A stretch of 64,000 bases of DNA from Tubulanus polymorphus (lineage: Eukaryota > Animalia > Nemertea): the NCBI RefSeq assembly GCF_964204645.1, contig NC_134032.1, positions 12,636,275-12,700,274 on the forward strand. Direction: 5' to 3'. How positions within the stretch are numbered: position 1 is the stretch's first letter; each line of letters begins with the position of its first letter. Shown here piece by piece: positions 49,549 to 64,000 of this stretch. The translations under genes and the position numbers were made by a program. Below the pieces are notes generated by a model, which made no database searches, was not told the DNA's origin, and saw only the letters and a list, made by a program, of their open reading frames with translations.

Positions 49549-52500
49549 TCTGGCAAATCGTAAAAACGGAACAACCCTTTTTGGTTTTTTTTAACAGCAG
49601 CTTTTTTATTCCCATGTAGAAATAAAGCGAACACATATCAATTATAGTATATAGTTACATAGTCATAATTCAAACACAGAATTTCTACTTAAAATTCCAC
49701 ACAGTTTTAAGACTAATCTCGGATCGGATACGCCATTAAGATTAGCTCCTGTTTATGGTGGCGCTGCTGGTTCAAACGAAATACAAATCAGTTTACATGT
49801 TTATGCAAGAGCTTACTCAAATCCCATTGTCGTTAAGCTAGATTGTATCAAATTACTCCATTACTCCATCCTTGCTTCATCTATTCTAAGACTAGTATCT
49901 AAGCGAAGGCTATTAGCTCAGCAGGTACGAATTTTATGATACACATTTTTTTTTACTCTTTCGCACCCATATTTGGTCATATTAAATTAGTTTTATAATA
50001 ATAGTATCAATAATCAACAATAGGTTATAATTATAATAATTGAATAATAAATTATGGTAATTTTATGACAAGCTTCGTTTTCAAAGAAAACAACAGGCCA
50101 CAAAAAGCCTTTGCAACAAACTTTTTACCGGATAGAATTTCAAAGCCCATTTTCAGGGAAAAAATGCCCCTCTCCTGTCGGGCAATTTTGAGGGCACCTT
50201 AAAAAGTAACGTGACAAATTAAGGCAATCATCATTCTTAACAATCTTAACTTATCATTTTTAATCGTGACAGCAGTTTTGAAATAATAATACATTTTCGG
50301 TTTTTCGTTATCAAATTCGAATATTTCCAATAAACGTGGCTACAAACATTAACTCTAGCCTGGATTTTATACACGAAGGTACTACGTATTCGTCACTCTA
50401 TGGGTTCCTAAATTACATTTACCCGATGTCTTTCTCGGTCGTTTCGACATTTAGAGGTCGTGCATATGACGTAATCAGTTTTTACAACGCCATATTGATG
50501 TCGTGCATGTGATGTAACCGTTATGGTCACTTGGTTGCTACAACCACCACGGAACCGGTTACATCATTTACATAAGATGAGGATGTAGAAACTACTGGGA
50601 TTTGTCACACGTAAACGTTCAAACAAAAATGGGGATGTAGAAACTTACTGGGATTCGTTATGTAAATGCGCTCGATCGCCAATATGGCGTCGTACAACCT
50701 CCCCCATTGCAGGCGACCTTGACACGTATTTGAAGTGTAAACAGCGCATTTCTTAAATCAACGAATTAACAACTAATCAAATAACAAACAAATCATTTCC
50801 TCGAATCCAGCACTAATTACATTTATCACTTAGGTAACGTGATAATGGAATTAGTTTTAGGCGGATGAATCCTATGTTAACGAAAGTGAACGCTATCATA
50901 TTCATATTGTTAACATGTTTAATGTCAATTTTGAATATCATGATAAATATTCAGTTGAATAGATTTGGGTAACATTTGGTTTTAATTAACGACATTGATT
51001 GATTTGAGCAACTTGTCTGTTAACCTGTGTGGGTGGGTGTTTGCATTTCTAGATAATGAGTACCACACCGGTTCATTCGGATAGGGGTCATTTCCGCGAG
51101 ATGTCGGTACGCCAGGTTGACGAAGAGCTATGAACAACGAAAGAATTTGTGAAACTACCCCTTAAAGTGACCACTACATCACGTTTAACCTACGACATCA
51201 ATTCTAGATATTTATATGCTATTCTATTAGGTACACCAACTTCACAATTACAACCTACGCCACCCATTGGTTTGCGAAGAACCATTAACATATGTTATAC
51301 GCGTGACCTTGATATGATGTATACAGTGAAATAAAATCAATAATACGGTTATAAAGACACTCGAATAACCAATGCAGATGCGAGTACTGAAAATGTCACA
51401 TGACCTCCCCAAGAACCGCAATGCCTTAGAAAATCGTTCCAAGAAATTTGGACAAAAATAAACGGAAAGGTTCAGAGGAATTTTGAAAGAAGTCAGAAAA
51501 AAGTGAGAAGTTAGTTACCAAAAGTTTTAGATAAAACCCCGCGCTAGGCGTTATAATAGGGTCCATTGCAGCATCGGGTTGCTCAATTTTAGGGCACCTC
51601 CTGTAGCAAGTGAGGCTCTCTAAAACTCTCCGAGGCTGCATTCACCTGTTAAACACTTCGTCTAAGGTTTCGAAACTAAAAAGTGACATAAAAAGAAAAC
51701 TATACCAAGAAAGAAAACTAGTGCACGTATCGTAAGTAATAATGTGCATTGACTTGAATTGACGAGACAATTGGTAGTAATAAAGTGAATTGTCTTTGAA
51801 TTGACGACGAGACATACTATCGATTTATGAAGTGAAAATCGATGTAAAGATAACATGGAAAATAACAGATAAACGTATGAATGTACAGATACAAAAAGAG
51901 AGATGGAAAAAACGGTAACAATTTTTCTGATTCTAATTTTTCTATATGAAAAATCACTTTTACGCTAAGCCTAATTATATAATCATACAGACCCTGGGCA
52001 TGCATCTGAATTTTTTGTTTTACAAACCTAAAAAAGAAGGTACAAAGAAATTTTATATCCGTCAAATCGCTACGTGATTCTACTAGGTTTTAGAGTTTGT
52101 TAACTACAAAATGCTTTCTTTTTAAAGTTTGAAAATGCATTTGATCTTTAAGTACGAAACACAGGAGTCAGTTCCTCAGTTGTGAGTTAGAGATTTGACT
52201 GCCGAGTTAAAAATACGTTCATTTTCAATCAATTAAATTGGTGAAGAGTAAAATTCTAACTCACAGAGGGTCCAGACATCGACACCACTGCTGGATCCAG
52301 TTTCGCAGTCGTGGAGTTAAAATAAAATTCTTATAAACACGAAAATACGGGGCCCGTTTTATAAACGAAATTCTCAAGAATACATTTAAAATACACATAC
52401 GAACGTAGCTCGAAATTGATTTGAGAATTTTGAAATCTGAAGTCAGTCTTACATCTGAGGAGGTGAAAACGTTCCAATTGTTACTACATGACTAATCACA

Positions 52501-54203: not shown

Positions 54204-57200
54204 TTAAAGAATTTCGCAGCTCTTACTGGGAGGTTTAGTCGTTTTTTCCGTTTCTAAGATCGCTTTGACGCCTGCCGCCATCTCGCGGACGGCGTCGATT
54301 TCAGACAGTCCCAGGCGGCGCTTGTTGGATAGATCGTAGACTCCGCCCACACTTTCGGTGTGTTCACCGTGAATTCCTAAAAGAAATCAACAGCAGGAAT
54401 GAATGAAATGGACAACATTTATGCGTATCCGAAGTTTGGGCGCTACTCTGGAACCAGCAAGAACTCTAACCCGTGAACCCTGGATCGGTGAGGCTATACA
54501 GGGCCATACAACAATAAGCACTTACATTTCTTATAGCTTTCTTATAGTTTAGTGAGGCTTATGTGTATTATGGGCGAAATGGCCACAACGGTTCCGAGAC
54601 ACGATCCAAAAAGAAATATTTTATACTATGTAATTTGATGTCGTGGGTTCTATCATGGCAGCATCCATATTTCTAGAAGAGTCTATAGATAAAATCACAA
54701 GGAATTTGATCATGTCATGATGGGATTTATGGAGGGAGCACACCCATCCATTCTGAAACGGTCAAGAGTATCTGAAATGCTTTCTTATTCGATGATATCA
54801 TAGGGAGATTTCGTCGAAGCGGCTATATGGTCTTACTATGATGAACGTGCATTCTAAATTCTCGATGGTTTAAACATACAAACCTCTAGCTTGGATGTGG
54901 TGTTGCTCGCAAAGTGGTTTGAATTCCTTGCTAGCAGCTGCCAAGTTTGGAACTTTAGCGTGTACGCTGGCGCGCAGGGTCGTGCCAAGATTCGTCGGAC
55001 AGAAAGTCAAATATCCTAACTTATCGGCCTTAGCGAATGTAAGCGTCTTTTCTAAATGATGAATCGCCTGAAATATAGATATGATTTTTGTCATTAGTAT
55101 TAACATACGATTCCCACGCGCAAACATGCGATACAGTAGACTCCAACCAGATTCCAATTTCACCAACTCTAACTCTGAAATTCACTTCGACAGAACTTTT
55201 TTTCCCACTTTTTCTTACCCTCACGAGACGCTTGTAAACCTCGGCGAGGTTTCCTCCTTTCTGCATGGATATGATTCTCATGTGATCCTCTTCGTTGCAC
55301 CAAACCAAAAACGTTTTGGCCTCGTTGAAAAAGATTCCTCGACCAGACGGCCAATCTCTGTATCCACCCGCTGACCTCAAAAACCTTAATTATAGTTGAT
55401 GGACAAATTCAGTTTAATTATTGGGCTTAATTAAACAACTAGTAAGATATTTTGAAGAAATATTTTACCTATCATGATCGTTGAATAAGAAATGATCTTC
55501 GACCAGTTTATCTTGCGTTTCCTTGTCCATTCCTTCCAACGAATGGTACGTTCCCTTCAAATCGTCTGTCAACGACTCGAGAGCGGCCTTCACCTTCGAT
55601 TCAATTTCCAGACGTTGCTGAAAAAATAACGAATCGGGAAAGTCATTAAACGAAGAAAACAATGAAACAAAGTGTCTGTCACGTTCCACTTTTATGGGAT
55701 TCGAATCCGATCAATGTATGGAACCAATCAGGTTCCTATACACCCGATGATTTTTCTTTTAGATTTGACGAGATATGTTATTTTTAGTTCCACTCGTCAG
55801 AAAGTTATTAAGAATTTCTTGAAGAATCTTATAAAATGTTTGCCATTATCTTATTTTACCTCGGTAGTTATACACGGAGGGAAGGGGTAGCCCTCTAATG
55901 AGCGACCGACTCGAACTCGAGTCGAAACCACCTGCGAATTATCCGGGTCCAAATCATCGAATCCCAACTCGTCCAAATTTCCCAGATCGGGTGTAGGATG
56001 GCTGATTTCTCCCTCGACTTTGTGGTAGTCTTTGATGACAGGATTGAAAATGTCTTCGAATGTCGAATAGGCCTCCGGGTCACAGGCGTAGATTCCTACT
56101 GAGCTTTCCGGATTCTCAACGCCTGCAATCAAACGTAAACACGTTTTTTTTCACGGTAACAAGAGGGCTCTGTATTAAAAATAACAAACACGTTTTCAGT
56201 GTTTATTCATTGAAATATGAACCGAGAATGGGCTTCATTTAATCAGTAATGAATGTGCACATATTACCTGGTTCCATAGTCATGGCTTAGACTCAAGACC
56301 AATTTAAGACCATCTTAGTTCTATAGCCAATCTAACAACTTAAGACCAGTCTTAGAATTTAAGACAATTTTTGGACTTAAGTCTCAACTGAGGAACCGGG
56401 CCCAGGGGCCGGTTCCATAGTCGAGACTTAAGTCCAAAAGTGATCTTAAATCTTAAGACTGGTCTTAAGCTGTTAGATTAGCTATATAACTAAAATAGTC
56501 TTAGACTAGTCTTAAGTCTAAGCCATGACTATGGAACCGGCCCCAGAATGGGTAAGATCCTCAGTTACACATCAAACATTTTTGTTTAAAGTATTCTGTT
56601 ATACCAAGGGGTAAGACCTTCGGTAACGCATTTCAAAATTTCCGTTCAAGATAATCAGCTTTCAAGAGGGTAAGACCTTCACTCAGTTACACGTTTAGTA
56701 TTGCGGTACACAACAAACCGATCAAATCAGTATTTCTCAAGTCAAAACACTAACTAGTAAATACCGATAGTTTGAATGATTTGTGGAGCAGCTCAGTGAC
56801 AATAACAATGCCTGGTTATTATACGTTGCAGTTAAAGTCGATGTGGGTATCAAATATCAAGTTTTGTTTGCCTCACCAGATTTGATGGAATCATACAGCG
56901 TTCCTCCCAATGACGTCTTCACTTCGTCGTACTTCTCAACAACTTCCGGCGTCAGATGTTTCTTCAACAGCGAGTGACACTTTTTATTAGCTTGCAGTTT
57001 CTTCTGAGCTTGTTTCAATTCGGATCCCATCTCTTTCTCCAGTTTGATGATTTCGGCCAGACCTTCGGCCATCTCCTTGACGGCGTCGATTTCGGTGAGA
57101 CCCAGTCGTCGCTTGTTGCTGATGTCGAAAACTCCGCCGACGCTTTCCGTGTGTTCGCCGTGGATACCTGGACATGTATCAAAGGTGAGCACAAACATGA

Positions 57201-60200
57201 GGGAACATTGAAACAGAAGAATTTGTTGGAATTAAACTCCCAAGTAATAGAACCGCGATCTTATTGAGACGATCTGGCCCGGTCCAAACTCCCCCGTTCC
57301 AGGCCAAATATAGATTTGGCCAGCGCTTATAATTAGAAAGTGCGTTCACTCGTAAATCACTCACTCGTTAGTGAAATGCTATCAAAACCTGATCCTGATC
57401 CACGGGCCTGATCCGACGTTTTTGGTTGGGCCAAAGTCAACCGAGGCGAAACAGGCATGGATCGATTTGGTACCGGTGTGAGCGGTTGGCTCGGGCCAAA
57501 AACGTTCGAGTGATCGCTGCTTAGGGAACTCTTTCATCGGTCTCCTCAAACAAGGGTTTGTGGGTACGAATCCGTTAATGTAAAGGACAAGAGCAAATTA
57601 ACAAGGACAATCCACATTTCTTATCGAATTCACTTGACACTTTTCAAGAAATCCTATAGGAATTTACGATAAGAGTTTTATTTCTAAGTGTGAGACGTTA
57701 CCTCTGGCTTGTAGATTATACTTGGCGCAGATATCTTTGAAATCCGATCGGGCGCTCACTCCGGGAATGCGCACGTGTACGCTTGCGCGGAGTGACGTGC
57801 CCAGGTTGGTCGGGCAGAACGTCAAATAACCCAGATTATCGCTGTGAGCAAATGTTAGTTCTTTGTCCAACTTTTGGACAGCCTGGAAAATAAAATTCGA
57901 CGAAGATTTTAGAATTAATTGTGCGAAAAGGGGGTAATAATCTTCGTGTAGAATTGAAGATAACAAAACAAAATCTTTCATTGGCAATTAAGCCAGTTAA
58001 AGCTTTGCCCATTGGGCTGATTTTATGGATCTGGACCCAGTTCCACAGTCCTCTGAGTCAAGATCTGACCGAATAGTTAAGATTTACCCACTGAAAATGA
58101 ACTTGTTTTAACTGAGAGTTATATCTACTCGCAACTGTGGAATCAAATCAAGTTTGTGTCTATTAAGCCAGGGATGAAAGTTAGAAGAAAATTGTCCACA
58201 AAATTCGTTTGATTTAACAAGTCATTTAATAGTTTTCTTTTTAAATATCTGTCCCTGGTGCTCAGCTAAAGTGGGTATTGATTAAGACTTACAGTCGCGA
58301 ATCGCTTGTAAACCTCGGCGAGGTTTCCTCCTTTCTGCATGGATATGATTCTCATGTGATCCTCTTCGTTGCACCAAACCAAGAAAGTTTTAGCGTCGTT
58401 ATGGTAGATACCTCTGCCCATTGGCCAGTTCCTGTAACCGCCAGCCGATCGCAAAAACCTGCAATAAGAGATACAACAAATGCGCATATAGTTTGTAAAT
58501 TCCCCCATACACAACCCCATCCCAAAGTCCCAGTTGTGATTGTGATAAGTATCATAGCCTAAGATGTTAGCTTCAAACAGGTTCTTCCAGGACCTTGCCT
58601 GAGACATGTGGCGTGAGAAACAAAACATGGCTCGACGCTACGAATAATTTGAAGACTATTGAACTGACGATTCTGCGCACGTCCCCGTTAAAACACAACT
58701 GATTTTGAGCATCTATGAACTTGGTTTGAAAAATATTCACATCGATACAAACTGTGACCAAAGAGTGACGACTTTCAGACACTCTTAGATTCACTTAAAA
58801 AGTGGCTGAATCATAACAGATGCTTATGGCGAATTCATAGATAGATTTGCATCAATTGATATTGAAACACAAGCTTCATTTCTTCCAAATCGTACCTGTC
58901 GTGATCGTTGAAAAGGAAATGATCTTCGGTAAGTTGTTTCTGCTGTTCTGGTGTCATCGCGTTCAGAGGGAAGTACGTGCCCTTCAGCTCATCCTCCAGA
59001 TTATTCAATGCGCCCGTGATTTTCCCTTCCAACTCAGCCAAATTCTGTAAAATGATTTATCACAAAAAGTTTTTACCTTCAGCATTGGGAAACCGAGAAC
59101 TGTTGAATCTCTAAATTGCGCGAAGATGTTTACCCATTCTATTCGTGGTGTTCCTCAAAATAATAACTTACCTCCTTTGGAATAACAGGCGGAAAAGCGT
59201 AACCGGTTATACTCCTTCCGCAGCGGACTCGAGTCGAGATGACGAACTTTCCTTCCGGATCGACGTCGCCGAACGGCAGATTTTCCAAATCGCCGAAATC
59301 GGCTTTCGGGTGGGTCAGTTCGCCGTGAACTTTGTGGTAGTCTTTGATTACCGGGTCGAACATTTCCGGGAAGGTGGCGTAGGCCTCCGGGTCACAGGCG
59401 TAGATTCCTACTGAGCTGTCCGGGTTCTCAACGCCTACAACGAGATATGGCAAACATTTTCTTTGAAATATGATGATGGCAAAATACGATGAATTCTATG
59501 ATTGTTGGGTCTACTGTTCAAGGCCCAAATACTAGGTCTTACATCTTAAGACTGGTTGTTAGAGCGGTCATGGAACCAAAATGCGCGTGGATGGTAAATT
59601 TGGTCCGCGTTAAGCGAAGACCCGAGTCAAGGATCCGAAAATATGTAAGGATATCAGAAACCGATTTCGTTTCTGAACGAGTAAGTCATAAGTTCGAGTG
59701 TGTCTGAGCTAGGCGAGATTTACTGTAGAAAATGAGGCAAATATTCAAAGAGAATATCAACTGACCAGATCGAATGCATGCCGCTAGAGTTCCGTTCAAC
59801 GAGGTTTTCGTGTCCTTGTATTTCGTCGGGTTGTTCTTCAAGTATTTCTTCATCAACGATTTACAATCTTTCACCGCCGAGATTTTCTTCGCCATGTATT
59901 CGACGTCGTCTCTGAGCGCTTTCTCCATCTCGATTAGTTTCACGACGCCTTCGGCCATCTCTTTGACGGCGTCGATTTCGGTGAGACCCAGTCGCCGCTT
60001 GTTGCTGATGTCGTAAACTCCACCGACGCTTTCCGTATGTTCGCCGTGGATACCTGAATCGAAGCAGACGACAGTTAAGACCAAACATTGTTTTTCAAAA
60101 ATGGCCCAGATTACACATAGAAATCTGTAAAAAGGCAGCGGCGAATTTTAATGAATATGATTTCATATCCTACGCAGGATCCAGTTCAAAGTTGTGAGTT

Positions 60201-63200
60201 ATATACAATTACTTCATTTCCAATGAGAACTGTGGAACTGGCTCCGTTTCAACAGTCGAGAAGCTAATTATGGCTTAGTGTTTAAGAGAGAAATAAAAAT
60301 CAAGTAATAAAATGGCAATGGGTTTAGTTAGAACCTGGCTAAAGGTCTAAAATTTGTTAGAAAAGTGTCGTAAAGGAGCCGTGACTTGTGTAGAATAGAT
60401 ACGAGACGAGAGGTTAACTAATTCTATTTGATGCACGATGTTTCGCTACTAGTATATAGTATTCACCTGATGATACTAGTATATTAGTATCATCAGGTGA
60501 ATGAGTGTCACCTGATGATGCTGCTATACATTAGTGGCGAAAGCTCGTGCATCAAATAAAATAGTTAACCATTACAGCACTCTCGTTGAGTACAGTGTAA
60601 AAGTGCATATCGAAAAAATGCACTTATTTTCAATATGAATTCTCAACCGTTCGCTCTAGTCAGTGATGTATGTTAAGACTTACCTCTCGGTTGTAGGTTC
60701 ATTTTTTCACAGGTTTCCTTGAAGTCCGGTTTCGATGCCAACAGCGGCAGTCTGACGTGTACACTGGCGCGCAGGGTCGTTCCAAGATTCGTCGGGCAGA
60801 ACGTCAAATATCCGTACTTATCGTGATGGGCAAACTTCATGTTGGTTTCCAATGATCGGATACCCTGAAAAAGACGTCGAATTAAACCCGAACGAATGTG
60901 AGTGCAGAGTCATATCAAACCCACACAACAGCTGTGGAATTGGCTTCCGAATCAAATTAAACCCAGACAACTGTGGAACTTGGTCCAAAGCAAACTTAAA
61001 CCAATGCATTTTCTTTCAAACTAACCTTCACTAGTCGGTTGTAAACCTCGGCGAGGTTTCCACCTTGTTGCATGGATATGATTCTCATGTGATCCTCTTC
61101 GTTGCACCAAACCAAAAACGTTTTATCGGAGTTATGGAAAATACCTCGACCAGACGGCCAATCTCTGTATCCGCCTGCTGACCTCAAAAACCTAGACGAA
61201 TATTTAATCTCCAATATAATATCCAATATCTGTTTTAAAGTTACGCGGACGTGCAAAGGCAATTTTAAGACGTCAAAGGTGAAAGATCGAATCAACGACT
61301 ATAATTCGACTATGTCATTGGGGGATTTCGCGAAGGCACCTACCGATCATGGTCGTTGAATAGGAAGTGATCGTCGGTGAGTTTCTGTTGGGTGTCTTTA
61401 TCCATTCCAGTCAGTGGGTAATAGGTACCGGCTAACTCGGGAGGCAAATCTTCCAACGTCTTCTTCAGATTGTCTTCAATCGACAGACGTTCCTACGGGA
61501 TAAGCACAGAATTGATATGAAGTATGGACTTAAAGGAATATAGGAGCTAAGATAACAAAGGAGCCAGTAGTTGAAATGGCAAGGAAGCATTCAGGTAAAA
61601 TTGTGATGTTATTCAAATATTCCAACTTTATCAAAGTATTCCAACTTTATCTTCATTCTAAAAACTAGGGTCAAACCTATCTTTTTTCTCAGTCCAATTT
61701 TTCCCTACCCTATTACAAAGTAGGGCTGATACCTGAGGCGTGGACTCGGAAACGGTAAGCATACAGTCAGGTAATTAGAGGTAATTCCCGCCTGAAAACA
61801 CGATCGACTGAATATGTTATTAACGGGCGGTGTGTAATTCAAACCTGCAGTTATTTAGTCGAGTATATGATCAAGGTGTGAGCAAGTACTATATACGAAT
61901 AGGTTGATGATTAACAGATGTGATCAGATCGTCTGTTTTACGATCAGCAGCCGGTTTGCCGACGCCAGATACTACGCGAAGGGCAGCTATTGAATCGGAT
62001 TTGAAAAGCTCCAAAAGCGTCCTATTTCATCATATTTCTTTAAATGATTATTTCTTTTAATTAACAGTTTTACTTAACAATAGGTTTTATTATGAGCAAT
62101 CGAGGATTCCACTTGAGGCATGCGACGATCCACCAGGTGTCGCTAGTGTGCAGTAGGACATCGACCGCTGTGGTAATCAACTTGATTCCACTCGAGGCAA
62201 GTGAGGATCCACCAGGTGGATAGCGTGCGATAGGGTTAGTTGATAAATCAAACTCCAAAATCCTCCTGTTTGTTAGTTATTTAATTCCAAATGATTGAAA
62301 TGGTTAATTTTTTTTCAAATCAAATTCGAGTTTCTATTTCAACAATATGATTTTTTGCTTCAATTTCCTATGAATCCAACTATAATTTCAAACGAAGAAT
62401 CGACAAAAAATTACTAAGTGCATTGCCTGTACCAACCTCGCTGCTAATCATAGGCGGATAAGGCAACTGGTCGATGCTGCGTCCAACTCGGACCCGCGTC
62501 GAGACCACGTACTCATTATCGGGGTCAAGGTCGCCGAACGGTAAGTTATCGATGTCTCCGAAATCCGGGGCCGGGTGACTGATCTCATCTGCTTCGACTT
62601 TGTGATAGTCCTTGATGACGCGTTGGAACAGATCACCGAACGTATCGTAACATTCGGCATCGGCGGCGTATATACCGGTACCGGAATCCAGATTCTCAAC
62701 ACCTTAAAAGATATGATTGAAAATCGTAATTGAAAATGTTTTTATTATTCCATACATGAAACAAGTCTCTGTATCTGCTTGAGGGGTTCACGCAACGGGA
62801 GAATAAGGCAGGGTTTGACACGTAGGTCAGTTTAGATATAGCTATTCCGGATTACACCCTTTTACCGGTCGCTTCTATCAGGTTTGATGCTATTCCGGAA
62901 TAGGTAGTGTAGTGGTCGAAACGAATGCCTCTCCCCCGTCACGCAACTCGCAAGCACCCTTGTCTGGTCGTTCGGGAGCGACACATTTGGATGGGGAAAT
63001 TTTATCTTCATTCACCTATCAGTTATACATGCACATTCGAATTTCAAATATTCAATGCCAAGTTTTGATTTAAAGTTATTTAATTTTCGACGAGATCAAT
63101 TTCAGTGACTGAAATCATAGAACTATGCTGAAATACAACTTACATGATTTGATGCAATGCTGTAAGGTGGCGCCACTGGCCGTTTTCGTATCCTTGTACT

Positions 63201-63300
63201 TCTCGACGAGGTCGGCGCTGAAGTGTTTTTTAGCGAGCGCCTTGCAATCTTTCGACGTGGATAACTTCTTGTGGTAATCCTGCAATGTTCCGACTTCCAT
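54204..63300 (-). CDS. Three-domain (contiguous trimer) arginine kinase, ~1063 aa, with a C-terminal CaaX box
   Basis: Sixteen phase-consistent exons, listed 5' to 3': 63144-63300, 62437-62702, 61344-61492, 61026-61191, 60684-60864, 59766-60053, 59172-59434, 58896-59044, 58293-58458, 57702-57882, 56877-57167, 55860-56122, 55469-55617, 55219-55384, 54884-55067, 54204-54376 (3192 nt in total). Each domain has an AK-type guanidino-specificity segment ([11 protein letters not shown] / [11 protein letters not shown] / [11 protein letters not shown]), KDYHK, STRVRx[38 protein letters not shown] and SNKRRLGL. The protein ends [16 protein letters not shown]. Confidence 0.95.
56270..56543. mobile_element. 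Adjacent inverted pair of ~135-bp Harbinger-like MITEs in an AK intron
   Basis: 56406-56543 has TIR GGGCCGGTTCCATAGTC and a CAG duplication. 56270-56402 is a diverged copy in the opposite orientation. Confidence 0.82.
60412..60570. mobile_element. Penelope-like palindromic remnant in AK intron 5
   Basis: Outer inverted arms GGTTAACTA..TATTTGATGCACGA and TCGTGCATCAAATA..TAGTTAACC, an inner palindrome at 60461-60502, and a hammerhead core. Confidence 0.65.
60509..60549 (+). ncRNA. Minimal type I hammerhead ribozyme (antisense to the AK pre-mRNA)
   Basis: Stem I CAC/GUG, core CUGAUGA-U, stem II GCUGCUA/UAGUGGC, GAAA, palindromic AGCU stem III, CUC cleavage triplet. Confidence 0.68.
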
Positions 63301-64000
63301 TCTTTCGGCGTTTATAGTCGTTAAACTGTTACGGATGAGAAGAAAATGCAATCTGAAAAGAGTCAAACAAAGAGCTTGAAAAAATCAGGTCTGCGCACGT
63401 GATGCCTGAAACCTTGGTTGTTTATACATTTTTCGATCGCAATTTGAGTGACGTCTAACCCGGACCAAACGACTGCAGGTCTGGATACTATGCTATCAAG
63501 GGAGAACCCAGCCGGTCAGCAAATGGTTTCGTAAAAAGGATTTTGTACGGAAATCCGTGCTCTGCTTACCGATAGAGGCCTTCCTGCTGAGAGGTCTAGA
63601 ACTGTAATGTACCCGGTCGGCGGGTACTACATACGGATTAGTCTGGAATCAGATATCAGTTCGTCTGCACTCTTTATTGAGGTTTCGGTTGGTTACAAAC
63701 GATCGATCAACCGATCGAAGTAATCGACCTTTAGTTCGCTAAAAGTCGAACATTTTACCGTCAACGAAGCAGAATTTAGCCAGACTTTTGATGACGCAAC
63801 ATGTACGTAAGCCGTGGTGATTAAAACACTAGATGCTCCAAATCATTAGGCATGATTGGATACAGCAGGGTGCTTGCTGAAGAGTATATCAAGTCTACAT
63901 TTGGACACGTTTTGATATAAAAATCACGATCGCGTGTAACTAATGGAAATCATTTTACTATTGAACACACTGACGGGTTTATTGTCGTTTGTAGTAGTGA

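What the first reader, a model, noticed from the sequence alone, without database searches (positions are those of the whole stretch)
54204..63300. Contiguous three-domain arginine kinase with a C-terminal prenylation (CaaX) signal: candidate membrane-tethered phosphoarginine shuttle
Seen: the scattered kinase fragments in the ORF track are not three genes. They splice into one ~1063-aa frame with three complete AK domains, all keeping NEEDH, CPTNLGT and GEHTE. There is no stop between domains: exons 59766-60053 and 56877-57167 each encode the end of one domain and the start of the next. Established: two-domain AKs occur in some bivalves and sea anemones, and two-domain taurocyamine kinases in trematodes. 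The classic contiguous trimer is flagellar creatine kinase, which is anchored to the sperm-tail membrane by N-myristoylation. Inference: this is an independent, convergent version in the AK lineage, with a trimer plus a lipid anchor at the opposite end, serving cilia or sperm flagella. I know of no characterised animal three-domain prenylated AK, but I could not search.
Basis: partly seen in the sequence, partly recalled or inferred. Interest (0 to 1): 0.9.

Follow-up and report, generated by a model that had tools for sequence, protein, structure and literature searches.

The report
Three-domain prenylated ribbon-worm arginine kinase
This is a real ribbon-worm gene for an energy-buffering enzyme with three catalytic units in one chain and a lipid-anchor signal at its end; each feature is already known from other animals, and only their combination in ribbon worms appears undescribed.

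Summary
Observation confirmed. Sixteen GT-AG exons (63300-54204, minus strand) give 1063 aa with three intact phosphagen-kinase domains, ending CEIL-stop. Spliced contigs of one sample cross both domain junctions. The protein is identical to RefSeq XP_074655963.1 of the nemertean Tubulanus polymorphus, auto-named 'taurocyamine kinase-like'. Lineus longissimus has a 73%-identical three-domain orthologue ending CTLL, and the domains pair D1-D1, D2-D2, D3-D3, so trimer and CaaX predate their split. The domains fall in the spiralian arginine kinase (AK) clade, not with creatine kinases, and keep the AK substrate residues. Arginine is likely but unassayed, and D1 groups with flatworm taurocyamine kinases. 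Novelty is lower than claimed. A Nematostella three-domain AK is deposited (BAL73225.1; it starts Met-Gly), a crinoid AK with a prenylation signal is published, and gastropod two-domain kinases carry the same tail. The ciliary or sperm role is untested; Lineus also has a flagellar creatine kinase trimer. RefSeq isoforms add an internal splice that removes the CaaX and an upstream exon with a mitochondrial-like leader. The scan also noted a six-domain relative 135 kb away (not checked). Verdict: new variant of a known kind.

The parts
63144..63300 (-). Exon 1 coding part, start ATG (MEVG..., strong context); domain 1 N-lobe
   Evidence: start conserved in Lineus orthologue P0001
62437..62702 (-). 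Exon 2, domain 1 guanidine-specificity region (D62,S63,G64,T65,Y68 equivalents)
61344..61492 (-). Exon 3, domain 1
61026..61191 (-). Exon 4, domain 1 NEEDH
60684..60864 (-). Exon 5, domain 1 CPTNLGT
59766..60053 (-). Exon 6: end of domain 1 (GEHTE) and start of domain 2, boundary near 59914; no bridge intron
   Evidence: record 25
59172..59434 (-). Exon 7, domain 2 specificity region
58896..59044 (-). Exon 8, domain 2
58293..58458 (-). Exon 9, domain 2 NEEDH
57702..57882 (-). Exon 10, domain 2 CPTNLGT
56877..57167 (-). Exon 11: end of domain 2 and start of domain 3, boundary near 57028; no bridge intron
   Evidence: records 19, 23
55860..56122 (-). Exon 12, domain 3 specificity region (Glu at the Asp62 position)
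55469..55617 (-). Exon 13, domain 3
55219..55384 (-). Exon 14, domain 3 NEEDH
54884..55067 (-). Exon 15, domain 3 CPTNLGT
54204..54376 (-). Exon 16 coding part: end of domain 3, tail and stop
   Evidence: records 17, 21
54207..54218 (-). CaaX codons (Cys-Glu-Ile-Leu), predicted geranylgeranylation signal
   Evidence: CTLL in Lineus
54221..54226 (-). Internal splice donor (GTAAGA) just upstream of the Cys codon; its use removes the CaaX
   Evidence: explains RefSeq isoform X2 ending TKPPSL
52020..52027 (-). Start of the inferred alternative terminal exon (strong pyrimidine tract, Ser-Leu-stop), 2199-nt intron from 54226
   Evidence: acceptor inferred to fit isoform X2, not seen in reads
63301..63352 (-). 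Acceptor at 63352 and in-frame leader; joins an exon 16.4 kb upstream (outside the window, L002 6001-6107) to give the 53-aa extension of RefSeq X1/X2
56280..56550 (.). High-copy inverted-repeat (MITE-like) element in intron 11; not part of the gene product
   Evidence: (summed depth over 30,000 in DNA contigs)

Best explanation
A nemertean arginine kinase made by two old tandem duplications and fusions of a spiralian AK gene, giving three catalytically intact domains in one 119-kDa chain. The main isoform ends in CEIL. It is most likely geranylgeranylated on the Cys, trimmed and methylated, and so tethered to a membrane, where it regenerates ATP from phosphoarginine next to ATP-consuming machinery (ion pumps, ciliary or cortical motors): three active sites per anchor. 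Shown: gene structure, splicing across both junctions, conserved catalytic motifs, AK-clade placement, and conservation of trimer and CaaX in Lineus. Inferred: arginine specificity (about 80%), prenylation and membrane binding (about 80%), activity of all three domains. Which membrane is unknown; ciliated epidermis is my preferred guess (about 35%), ahead of muscle or nerve plasma membrane and sperm.
For: Model and motifs; spliced contigs; identity with RefSeq X3. The orthologue is 73% identical over the full length and ends CTLL. D1, D2 and D3 each pair with Lineus at 99-100 bootstrap, inside a spiralian AK clade at 100/99, with CK as outgroup. AK residues Asp62 (Glu in D3), Ser63, Tyr68 and Arg193, which are needed for activity in Nautilus AK (PMC11492440), are kept, as is the AK-length specificity region; trematode TKs lack these features. 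Cys at -4 is strongly enriched across relatives. Precedent: lipid-anchored flagellar CK trimer (PMC3080659) and trypanosome flagellar AK with a proposed acylated N-terminus (PMC4517888).
Against: There is no assay, proteomics or localisation. D1 is sister to the flatworm taurocyamine kinases (99/97), the best PDB hit is Schistosoma TK 4wo8, and RefSeq names the gene TK-like. Glu at a1 is atypical, and the tail is only weakly basic (3 K/R against 2 D/E), so there is no strong second membrane signal. RefSeq X2 lacks the CaaX.
Confidence: 0.62

Rival explanations
1. It is specifically a ciliary or sperm-flagellar phosphoarginine shuttle, a convergent counterpart of flagellar creatine kinase.
For: Trimer plus lipid anchor mirrors flagellar CK. 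AKs are known in ciliate cilia and trypanosome flagella. CaaX-tailed multi-domain kinases occur in gastropods, chitons and nemerteans, which from general knowledge have heavily ciliated epithelia.
Against: Lineus has a three-domain flagellar CK with a Met-Gly isoform, so the sperm role is probably taken. The -1 residue is Ser, as in non-ciliary Rheb (-3 Ser is INPP5E-like), which is not the high-affinity PDE6delta signature (that rule comes from mammalian farnesylated cargo). No tissue data were available.
Confidence: 0.33
2. It is a taurocyamine (or other non-arginine guanidine) kinase, an early member of the AK-derived TK lineage of flatworms.
For: D1 of both nemerteans is sister to the flatworm two-domain TK clade (99/97), and a nemertean-only clade is rejected at p-AU 0.02 (group chosen after seeing the tree, LG+G4). 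Best PDB hit is TK. Lineus has phase-1 bridge introns, and so does Clonorchis TK.
Against: The specificity region is AK-like in all three domains ([24 protein letters not shown]) and Arg193 is present, whereas trematode TKs have a shorter region without Tyr68, Asp62 or Arg193. Identity to Nautilus and Cellana AK (58-61%) exceeds that to the TKs (50-58%). The RefSeq name is automatic.
Confidence: 0.15
3. One gene supplies a whole phosphoarginine circuit by isoform choice: an upstream exon adds a mitochondrial leader (X1/X2), the internal donor at 54226 removes the CaaX (X2), and the plain form (X3) is membrane-anchored.
For: RefSeq lists X1 (1116 aa), X2 (1111 aa) and X3 (1063 aa). The 53-aa leader has 8 Arg/Lys, 1 acidic residue and an amphipathic stretch (hydrophobic moment 0.89). 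Donor GTAAGA and a strong acceptor at 52027 reproduce the X2 end exactly.
Against: Neither feature is conserved in Lineus: there is an in-frame stop eight codons before its ATG and GC instead of GT at the donor. The leader includes a poly-Ser microsatellite, and its ATG has a weaker context, so it may be 5' UTR. My reads showed only the CaaX form and did not cover either alternative exon.
Confidence: 0.2
4. It is an ordinary soluble muscle AK; the CaaX is unused or incidental and the fusion only raises enzyme dose.
For: Fusions of phosphagen kinase domains have arisen many times. Myristoylated and non-myristoylated pools coexist in flagellar CK.
Against: A CaaL-type tail is kept between Tubulanus and Lineus and across many gastropods, on an otherwise variable extension.
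Confidence: 0.12

Closest known systems
Nematostella vectensis three-domain arginine kinase (BAL73225.1 / I0FXI8; Uda, Ellington and Suzuki 2012, PMID 22305986)
   Same: Three fused AK-lineage domains, about 1080 aa, with a predicted lipid anchor (it starts MGLFPSK). From memory, the paper showed AK activity and noted a myristoylation signal; I could not read it.
   Different: Cnidarian AK clade, 46-50% identity per domain. A shared clade with the nemertean and flatworm domains is rejected (p-AU 1e-5). N-terminal Met-Gly instead of C-terminal CaaX.
Gastropod and chiton two-domain 'taurocyamine kinase-like' / AK proteins with CaaX (Haliotis XP_046345804.2, Lottia, Patella, Gigantopelta XP_041355015.1, Biomphalaria, Liolophura)
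   Same: Spiralian AK clade, AK-type specificity region, 58-64% identity (Gigantopelta), near-identical S-C-a-a-L/I tail.
   Different: Two domains; they group with molluscan AKs (88/90), not with the nemertean domains, so the fusions are separate events.
Prenylation-signal arginine kinase of the crinoid Tropiometra (Chouno et al. 2015, PMID 25964010)
   Same: Animal AK with a prenylation signal (title seen).
   Different: Echinoderm enzyme; its sequence and domain number were not checked here.
Trematode two-domain taurocyamine kinases (Schistosoma 4wo8, Clonorchis, Paragonimus)
   Same: Closest characterised clade to D1 in the tree; contiguous domains; intron phases match the molluscan-AK type; phase-1 bridge intron as in Lineus.
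   Different: Two domains, no CaaX, altered specificity region, taurocyamine as substrate.
Flagellar creatine kinase (contiguous CK trimer of sea urchin, Ciona and others)
   Same: Three contiguous phosphagen-kinase domains with a lipid anchor.
   Different: CK clade (100/100), 39-44% identity, CK-type specificity insertion, N-myristoylation; Lineus has its own copy.

Membership tests
Phosphagen kinase (ATP:guanido phosphotransferase) | PF02807 + PF00217 domains with NEEDH, reactive Cys (CPTNLGT) and GEHTE loop | tested here: met
   three complete copies
Arginine kinase | Groups within the AK lineage, apart from CK/GK/LK | tested here: met
   spiralian AK clade 100/99; CK outgroup 100/100
Arginine kinase | Asp62, Ser63, Tyr68, Arg193 and AK-length specificity region | tested here: met
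   all kept; D3 has Glu62, position 64 is Ser in D2 and D3, position 65 is Thr in D1
Arginine kinase | Phosphorylates L-arginine | not testable with these tools
   needs an enzyme assay
Trematode-type taurocyamine kinase | Shortened specificity region lacking Tyr68, Asp62 and Arg193 | tested here: not met
Trematode-type taurocyamine kinase | Inside the flatworm TK clade | tested here: not met
   D1 is sister to the clade, not inside it; D2 and D3 lie further out
Flagellar creatine kinase | Three contiguous domains | tested here: met
Flagellar creatine kinase | CK-clade domains with CK-type specificity region | tested here: not met
Flagellar creatine kinase | N-terminal myristoylation (Met-Gly) | tested here: not met
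   starts MEV or MRC
Cnidarian three-domain AK (Nematostella type) | Domains descend from the cnidarian two-domain AK clade | tested here: not met
CaaX-prenylated proteins (GGTase-I type) | Terminal Cys-a-aliphatic-Leu, conserved among orthologues | tested here: met
   CEIL and CTLL; enrichment at -4
CaaX-prenylated proteins (GGTase-I type) | Actual prenylation and membrane binding | not testable with these tools
   needs labelling or mass spectrometry
High-affinity ciliary PDE6delta cargo | Hydrophobic residue at -1 and Ser at -3 before the Cys | tested here: not met
   -1 Ser, -3 Ser; rule derived from mammalian farnesylated cargo

The most novel reading that the evidence does not exclude
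A single nemertean gene encodes a trimeric AK whose address is switched by splicing (geranylgeranyl-anchored, soluble or mitochondrial) and supplies a complete phosphoarginine shuttle for ciliary gliding. One of its repeats (D1) marks the lineage from which flatworm taurocyamine kinases arose.
Probability: 0.12. Interest if true: 0.7.

Novelty: new variant of a known kind. Interest (0 to 1): 0.38.

Why it matters
It adds an independent case of the design 'fused phosphagen-kinase repeats plus lipid anchor', after flagellar CK (N-myristoyl) and Nematostella three-domain AK (Met-Gly start), here with the anchor at the C-terminus. It also shows that CaaX-tailed multi-domain AKs are widespread in snails, chitons and ribbon worms under misleading 'taurocyamine kinase-like' names; my paper searches found no study of them. 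If D1's link to flatworm TKs holds, the enzyme is a handy outgroup for how trematode TK, a proposed drug target, changed substrate from arginine. It does not overturn a principle.

Tried and rejected
Three separate tandem genes: rejected, because there is no stop or intron at the junctions and spliced contigs cross both. Assembly or recent-duplication artefact: rejected, since the domains are only 62-66% identical and each pairs with its Lineus counterpart. CK lineage: rejected. Common origin with the Nematostella trimer: rejected. The joint '60055 goes back to 54959' is read as exon 5 sequence laid on its look-alike exon 15 (exon 5 was outside the stretch), not as a circular or scrambled RNA. 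No synteny signal was found between the Lineus downstream sugar-transporter region and the window, and there is no other phosphagen kinase sequence below 54000. Searches of the open literature found no paper on nemertean AKs or on gastropod CaaX AK localisation; the two key papers are not held. The mixture-model tree finished only as a quick tree. Database searches used single exons by window reference or public proteins returned by the tools, by id: P0001 and P0159:54-404. The latter is the RefSeq record of this same gene and is identical to domain 1 of my model. The model was assembled only inside local scripts, for frame checks, alignments and trees. No structure was predicted.

Full report
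Observation. I rebuilt the gene from the minus strand. It has 16 coding exons from 63300 to 54204, all introns GT-AG, and 3192 nt giving 1063 aa (119.4 kDa) with one terminal stop. The three repeats (about aa 1-353, 354-702, 703-1053) are 62-66% identical. Each keeps NEEDH, CPTNLGT and GEHTE and the same five intron positions and phases. Exons 6 and 11 each carry the Pfam C-terminal domain followed by the N-terminal domain, with no stop between. The chain ends in a short extension, [10 protein letters not shown]-stop.

Expression. Of the public runs that hold the region, X5 and X6 (one 2014 sample, kind not on record) behave as transcripts. They have essentially no depth in unique intron sequence, and they show joints for introns 6-13 at the predicted sites, with intron 15 seen as adjacent pieces of one contig. 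Records 25 and 19/23 cross the D1-D2 and D2-D3 junction exons into the next exon. Record 17 runs from exon 15 through the CaaX codons and carries about 1.5 kb more sequence beyond the laid stretch, probably 3' UTR. Limits: these are contigs of one sample, none spans the gene, intron 14 was not shown cleanly, introns 1-5 were outside the 6-kb stretch, and the tissue is unknown.

Identity. An exon-6 search of the 50% representatives returned a 1060-aa protein at 67% identity: Lineus longissimus XP_064653124.1, 'taurocyamine kinase-like'. Searching with it found Tubulanus polymorphus XP_074655962.1, 100% identical to my model over 1057 aa. Isoform X3 (XP_074655963.1) equals the model exactly. So the window is from the nemertean Tubulanus polymorphus and the gene is already automatically annotated, though I found no paper on it. 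The Lineus orthologue is 73% identical over the full length, starts MEVG and ends SKSCTLL.

Phylogeny. In per-domain trees (56 rows, LG+G4; 95 rows, quick mixture model; near-identical tandem copies and redundant taxa left out), Tubulanus D1, D2 and D3 each pair with their Lineus counterparts (99-100 bootstrap). The trimer therefore predates the split of these two nemertean lineages. All lie in a spiralian AK clade (100/99), away from flagellar CK and from the cnidarian AKs. A clade joining them and the flatworm kinases with the Nematostella trimer is rejected (p-AU 1e-5). D1 is sister to the flatworm two-domain kinases, including trematode TKs (99/97), and a nemertean-only clade is rejected at p-AU 0.02. 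That result is tentative: the group was chosen after seeing the tree, the model is simple, flatworm branches are longish, and patches of nucleotide identity between repeats point to gene conversion. Gastropod CaaX dimers group with molluscan AKs (88/90), so they are a separate fusion.

Substrate. The specificity region has AK length and reads [16 protein letters not shown] and PESSVGIY; Arg193 is present in all three domains. Mutating Ser63, Tyr68, Asp62 or Arg193 damages Nautilus AK (PMC11492440). Trematode TKs have a shorter region and lack these residues (PMC3836730). Identity to Nautilus and Cellana AK is 58-61%, to trematode TK 50-58%, and to flagellar CK 39-44%. Arginine is therefore the likely substrate (about 80%, inference). 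The best PDB match is nonetheless Schistosoma TK, so an assay is needed.

The anchor. CEIL fits a GGTase-I type CaaX (established rule, from my own knowledge; Glu at a1 is atypical). It is conserved as CTLL in Lineus. Equivalent tails sit on two-domain kinases of many gastropods and a chiton, on a single-domain chiton AK, and on four- and five-domain proteins from metagenome contigs, two of which I fetched and found intronless. Cys at -4 occurs in 43 of 297 fetched kinases against 0-2 at neighbouring positions. The tail is only weakly basic and has Ser at -1 and -3. In mammals, high-affinity ciliary PDE6delta cargo has a hydrophobic -1 residue, while Rheb-like Ser marks low-affinity, non-ciliary cargo (PMC5512577). 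This gives no support for exclusive ciliary sorting, though the rule may not transfer. Lineus also has a three-domain flagellar CK with a Met-Gly isoform, which weakens the sperm-tail reading.

Isoforms. RefSeq X2 ends TKPPSL without the CaaX. The window explains this: a GTAAGA donor at 54226 and a strong acceptor at 52027 give exactly Ser-Leu-stop. X1 and X2 add 53 aa, from an exon 16.4 kb upstream that joins at 63352. The leader has 8 Arg/Lys, 1 acidic residue and an amphipathic stretch, like a mitochondrial presequence, as the scan's note s1-509300 suggested. Neither feature is open in Lineus, and I could not test them with reads, so they may be minor or non-coding.

Mechanism. Shown: one transcript unit encoding three intact domains and a conserved CaaX. 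Inferred: prenylation tethers three active sites to a membrane, where phosphoarginine arriving by diffusion regenerates ATP beside pumps or motors, as the lipid-anchored flagellar CK trimer does (PMC3080659) and as proposed for trypanosome flagellar AK (PMC4517888). Confidence about 0.6 for 'membrane-tethered trimeric AK' and about 0.33 for a specifically ciliary or flagellar role.

Comparison and novelty. A three-domain AK is on record from Nematostella (BAL73225.1, named 'three-domain arginine kinase'; starts MGLFPSK; Uda et al. 2012). A prenylation signal in an animal AK was reported in 2015 (Chouno et al.). I saw both papers only as titles in PMC6429109. Further three- to six-domain AK-lineage proteins are deposited from Pinctada, Macrostomum, a prawn and a Lineus paralogue. 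What appears undescribed is the combination of trimer and C-terminal prenyl signal as a trait shared by two distant nemerteans, of independent origin. That is a new variant of a known kind; interest 0.38.

Method note. Searches used single exons by reference or tool-returned public proteins by id, including P0159:54-404, the RefSeq copy of domain 1 of this same gene.

Noticed in passing
window 59766-60053 and 56877-57167; L001 13092-13422 and 17138-17701: The Lineus orthologue has 18 coding exons, with phase-1 bridge introns (331 and 564 nt) at both domain junctions. Tubulanus lacks both, most simply a precise loss at two paralogous sites. Clonorchis TK also has a phase-1 bridge intron.
   Followed up: partly
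window exons 61026-61191, 58293-58458, 55219-55384 and the first 105 nt of 60053-59766 and 57167-56877: Long runs of identical nucleotides between repeats (82-88% overall against 52-64% in other exons) suggest gene conversion between the three domains.
   Followed up: partly
window 56280-56550: Very high-copy inverted-repeat element (MITE-like) in intron 11; similar-looking copies lie near 59560 and 53650.
   Followed up: no
protein P0166 (Lineus XP_064652496.1): A second three-domain AK-lineage kinase on a Lineus contig of the same length as the orthologue's (probably the same chromosome), with an Arg-rich leader and Met at the Tyr68 position. It may be related to the six-domain kinase the scan noted 135 kb from this window.
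   Followed up: no
L003 3001-7347 and L004 3001-7674: Intronless four- to five-domain phosphagen kinases with CaaX tails on metagenome contigs (unidentified, probably protists); in the tree, L003's protein and similar ENA proteins sit near cnidarian AKs, a separate case of repeats plus prenyl signal.
   Followed up: partly
proteins P0156, P0161 (Macrostomum), P0164 (Pinctada), P0003 (Macrobrachium): Other independently expanded three- to six-domain AK-lineage proteins, one fused to ankyrin repeats; gene models not checked.
   Followed up: no
L002 537-2797: A sulfotransferase-family gene (PF03567) lies on the same strand just upstream of the distal leader exon.
   Followed up: no
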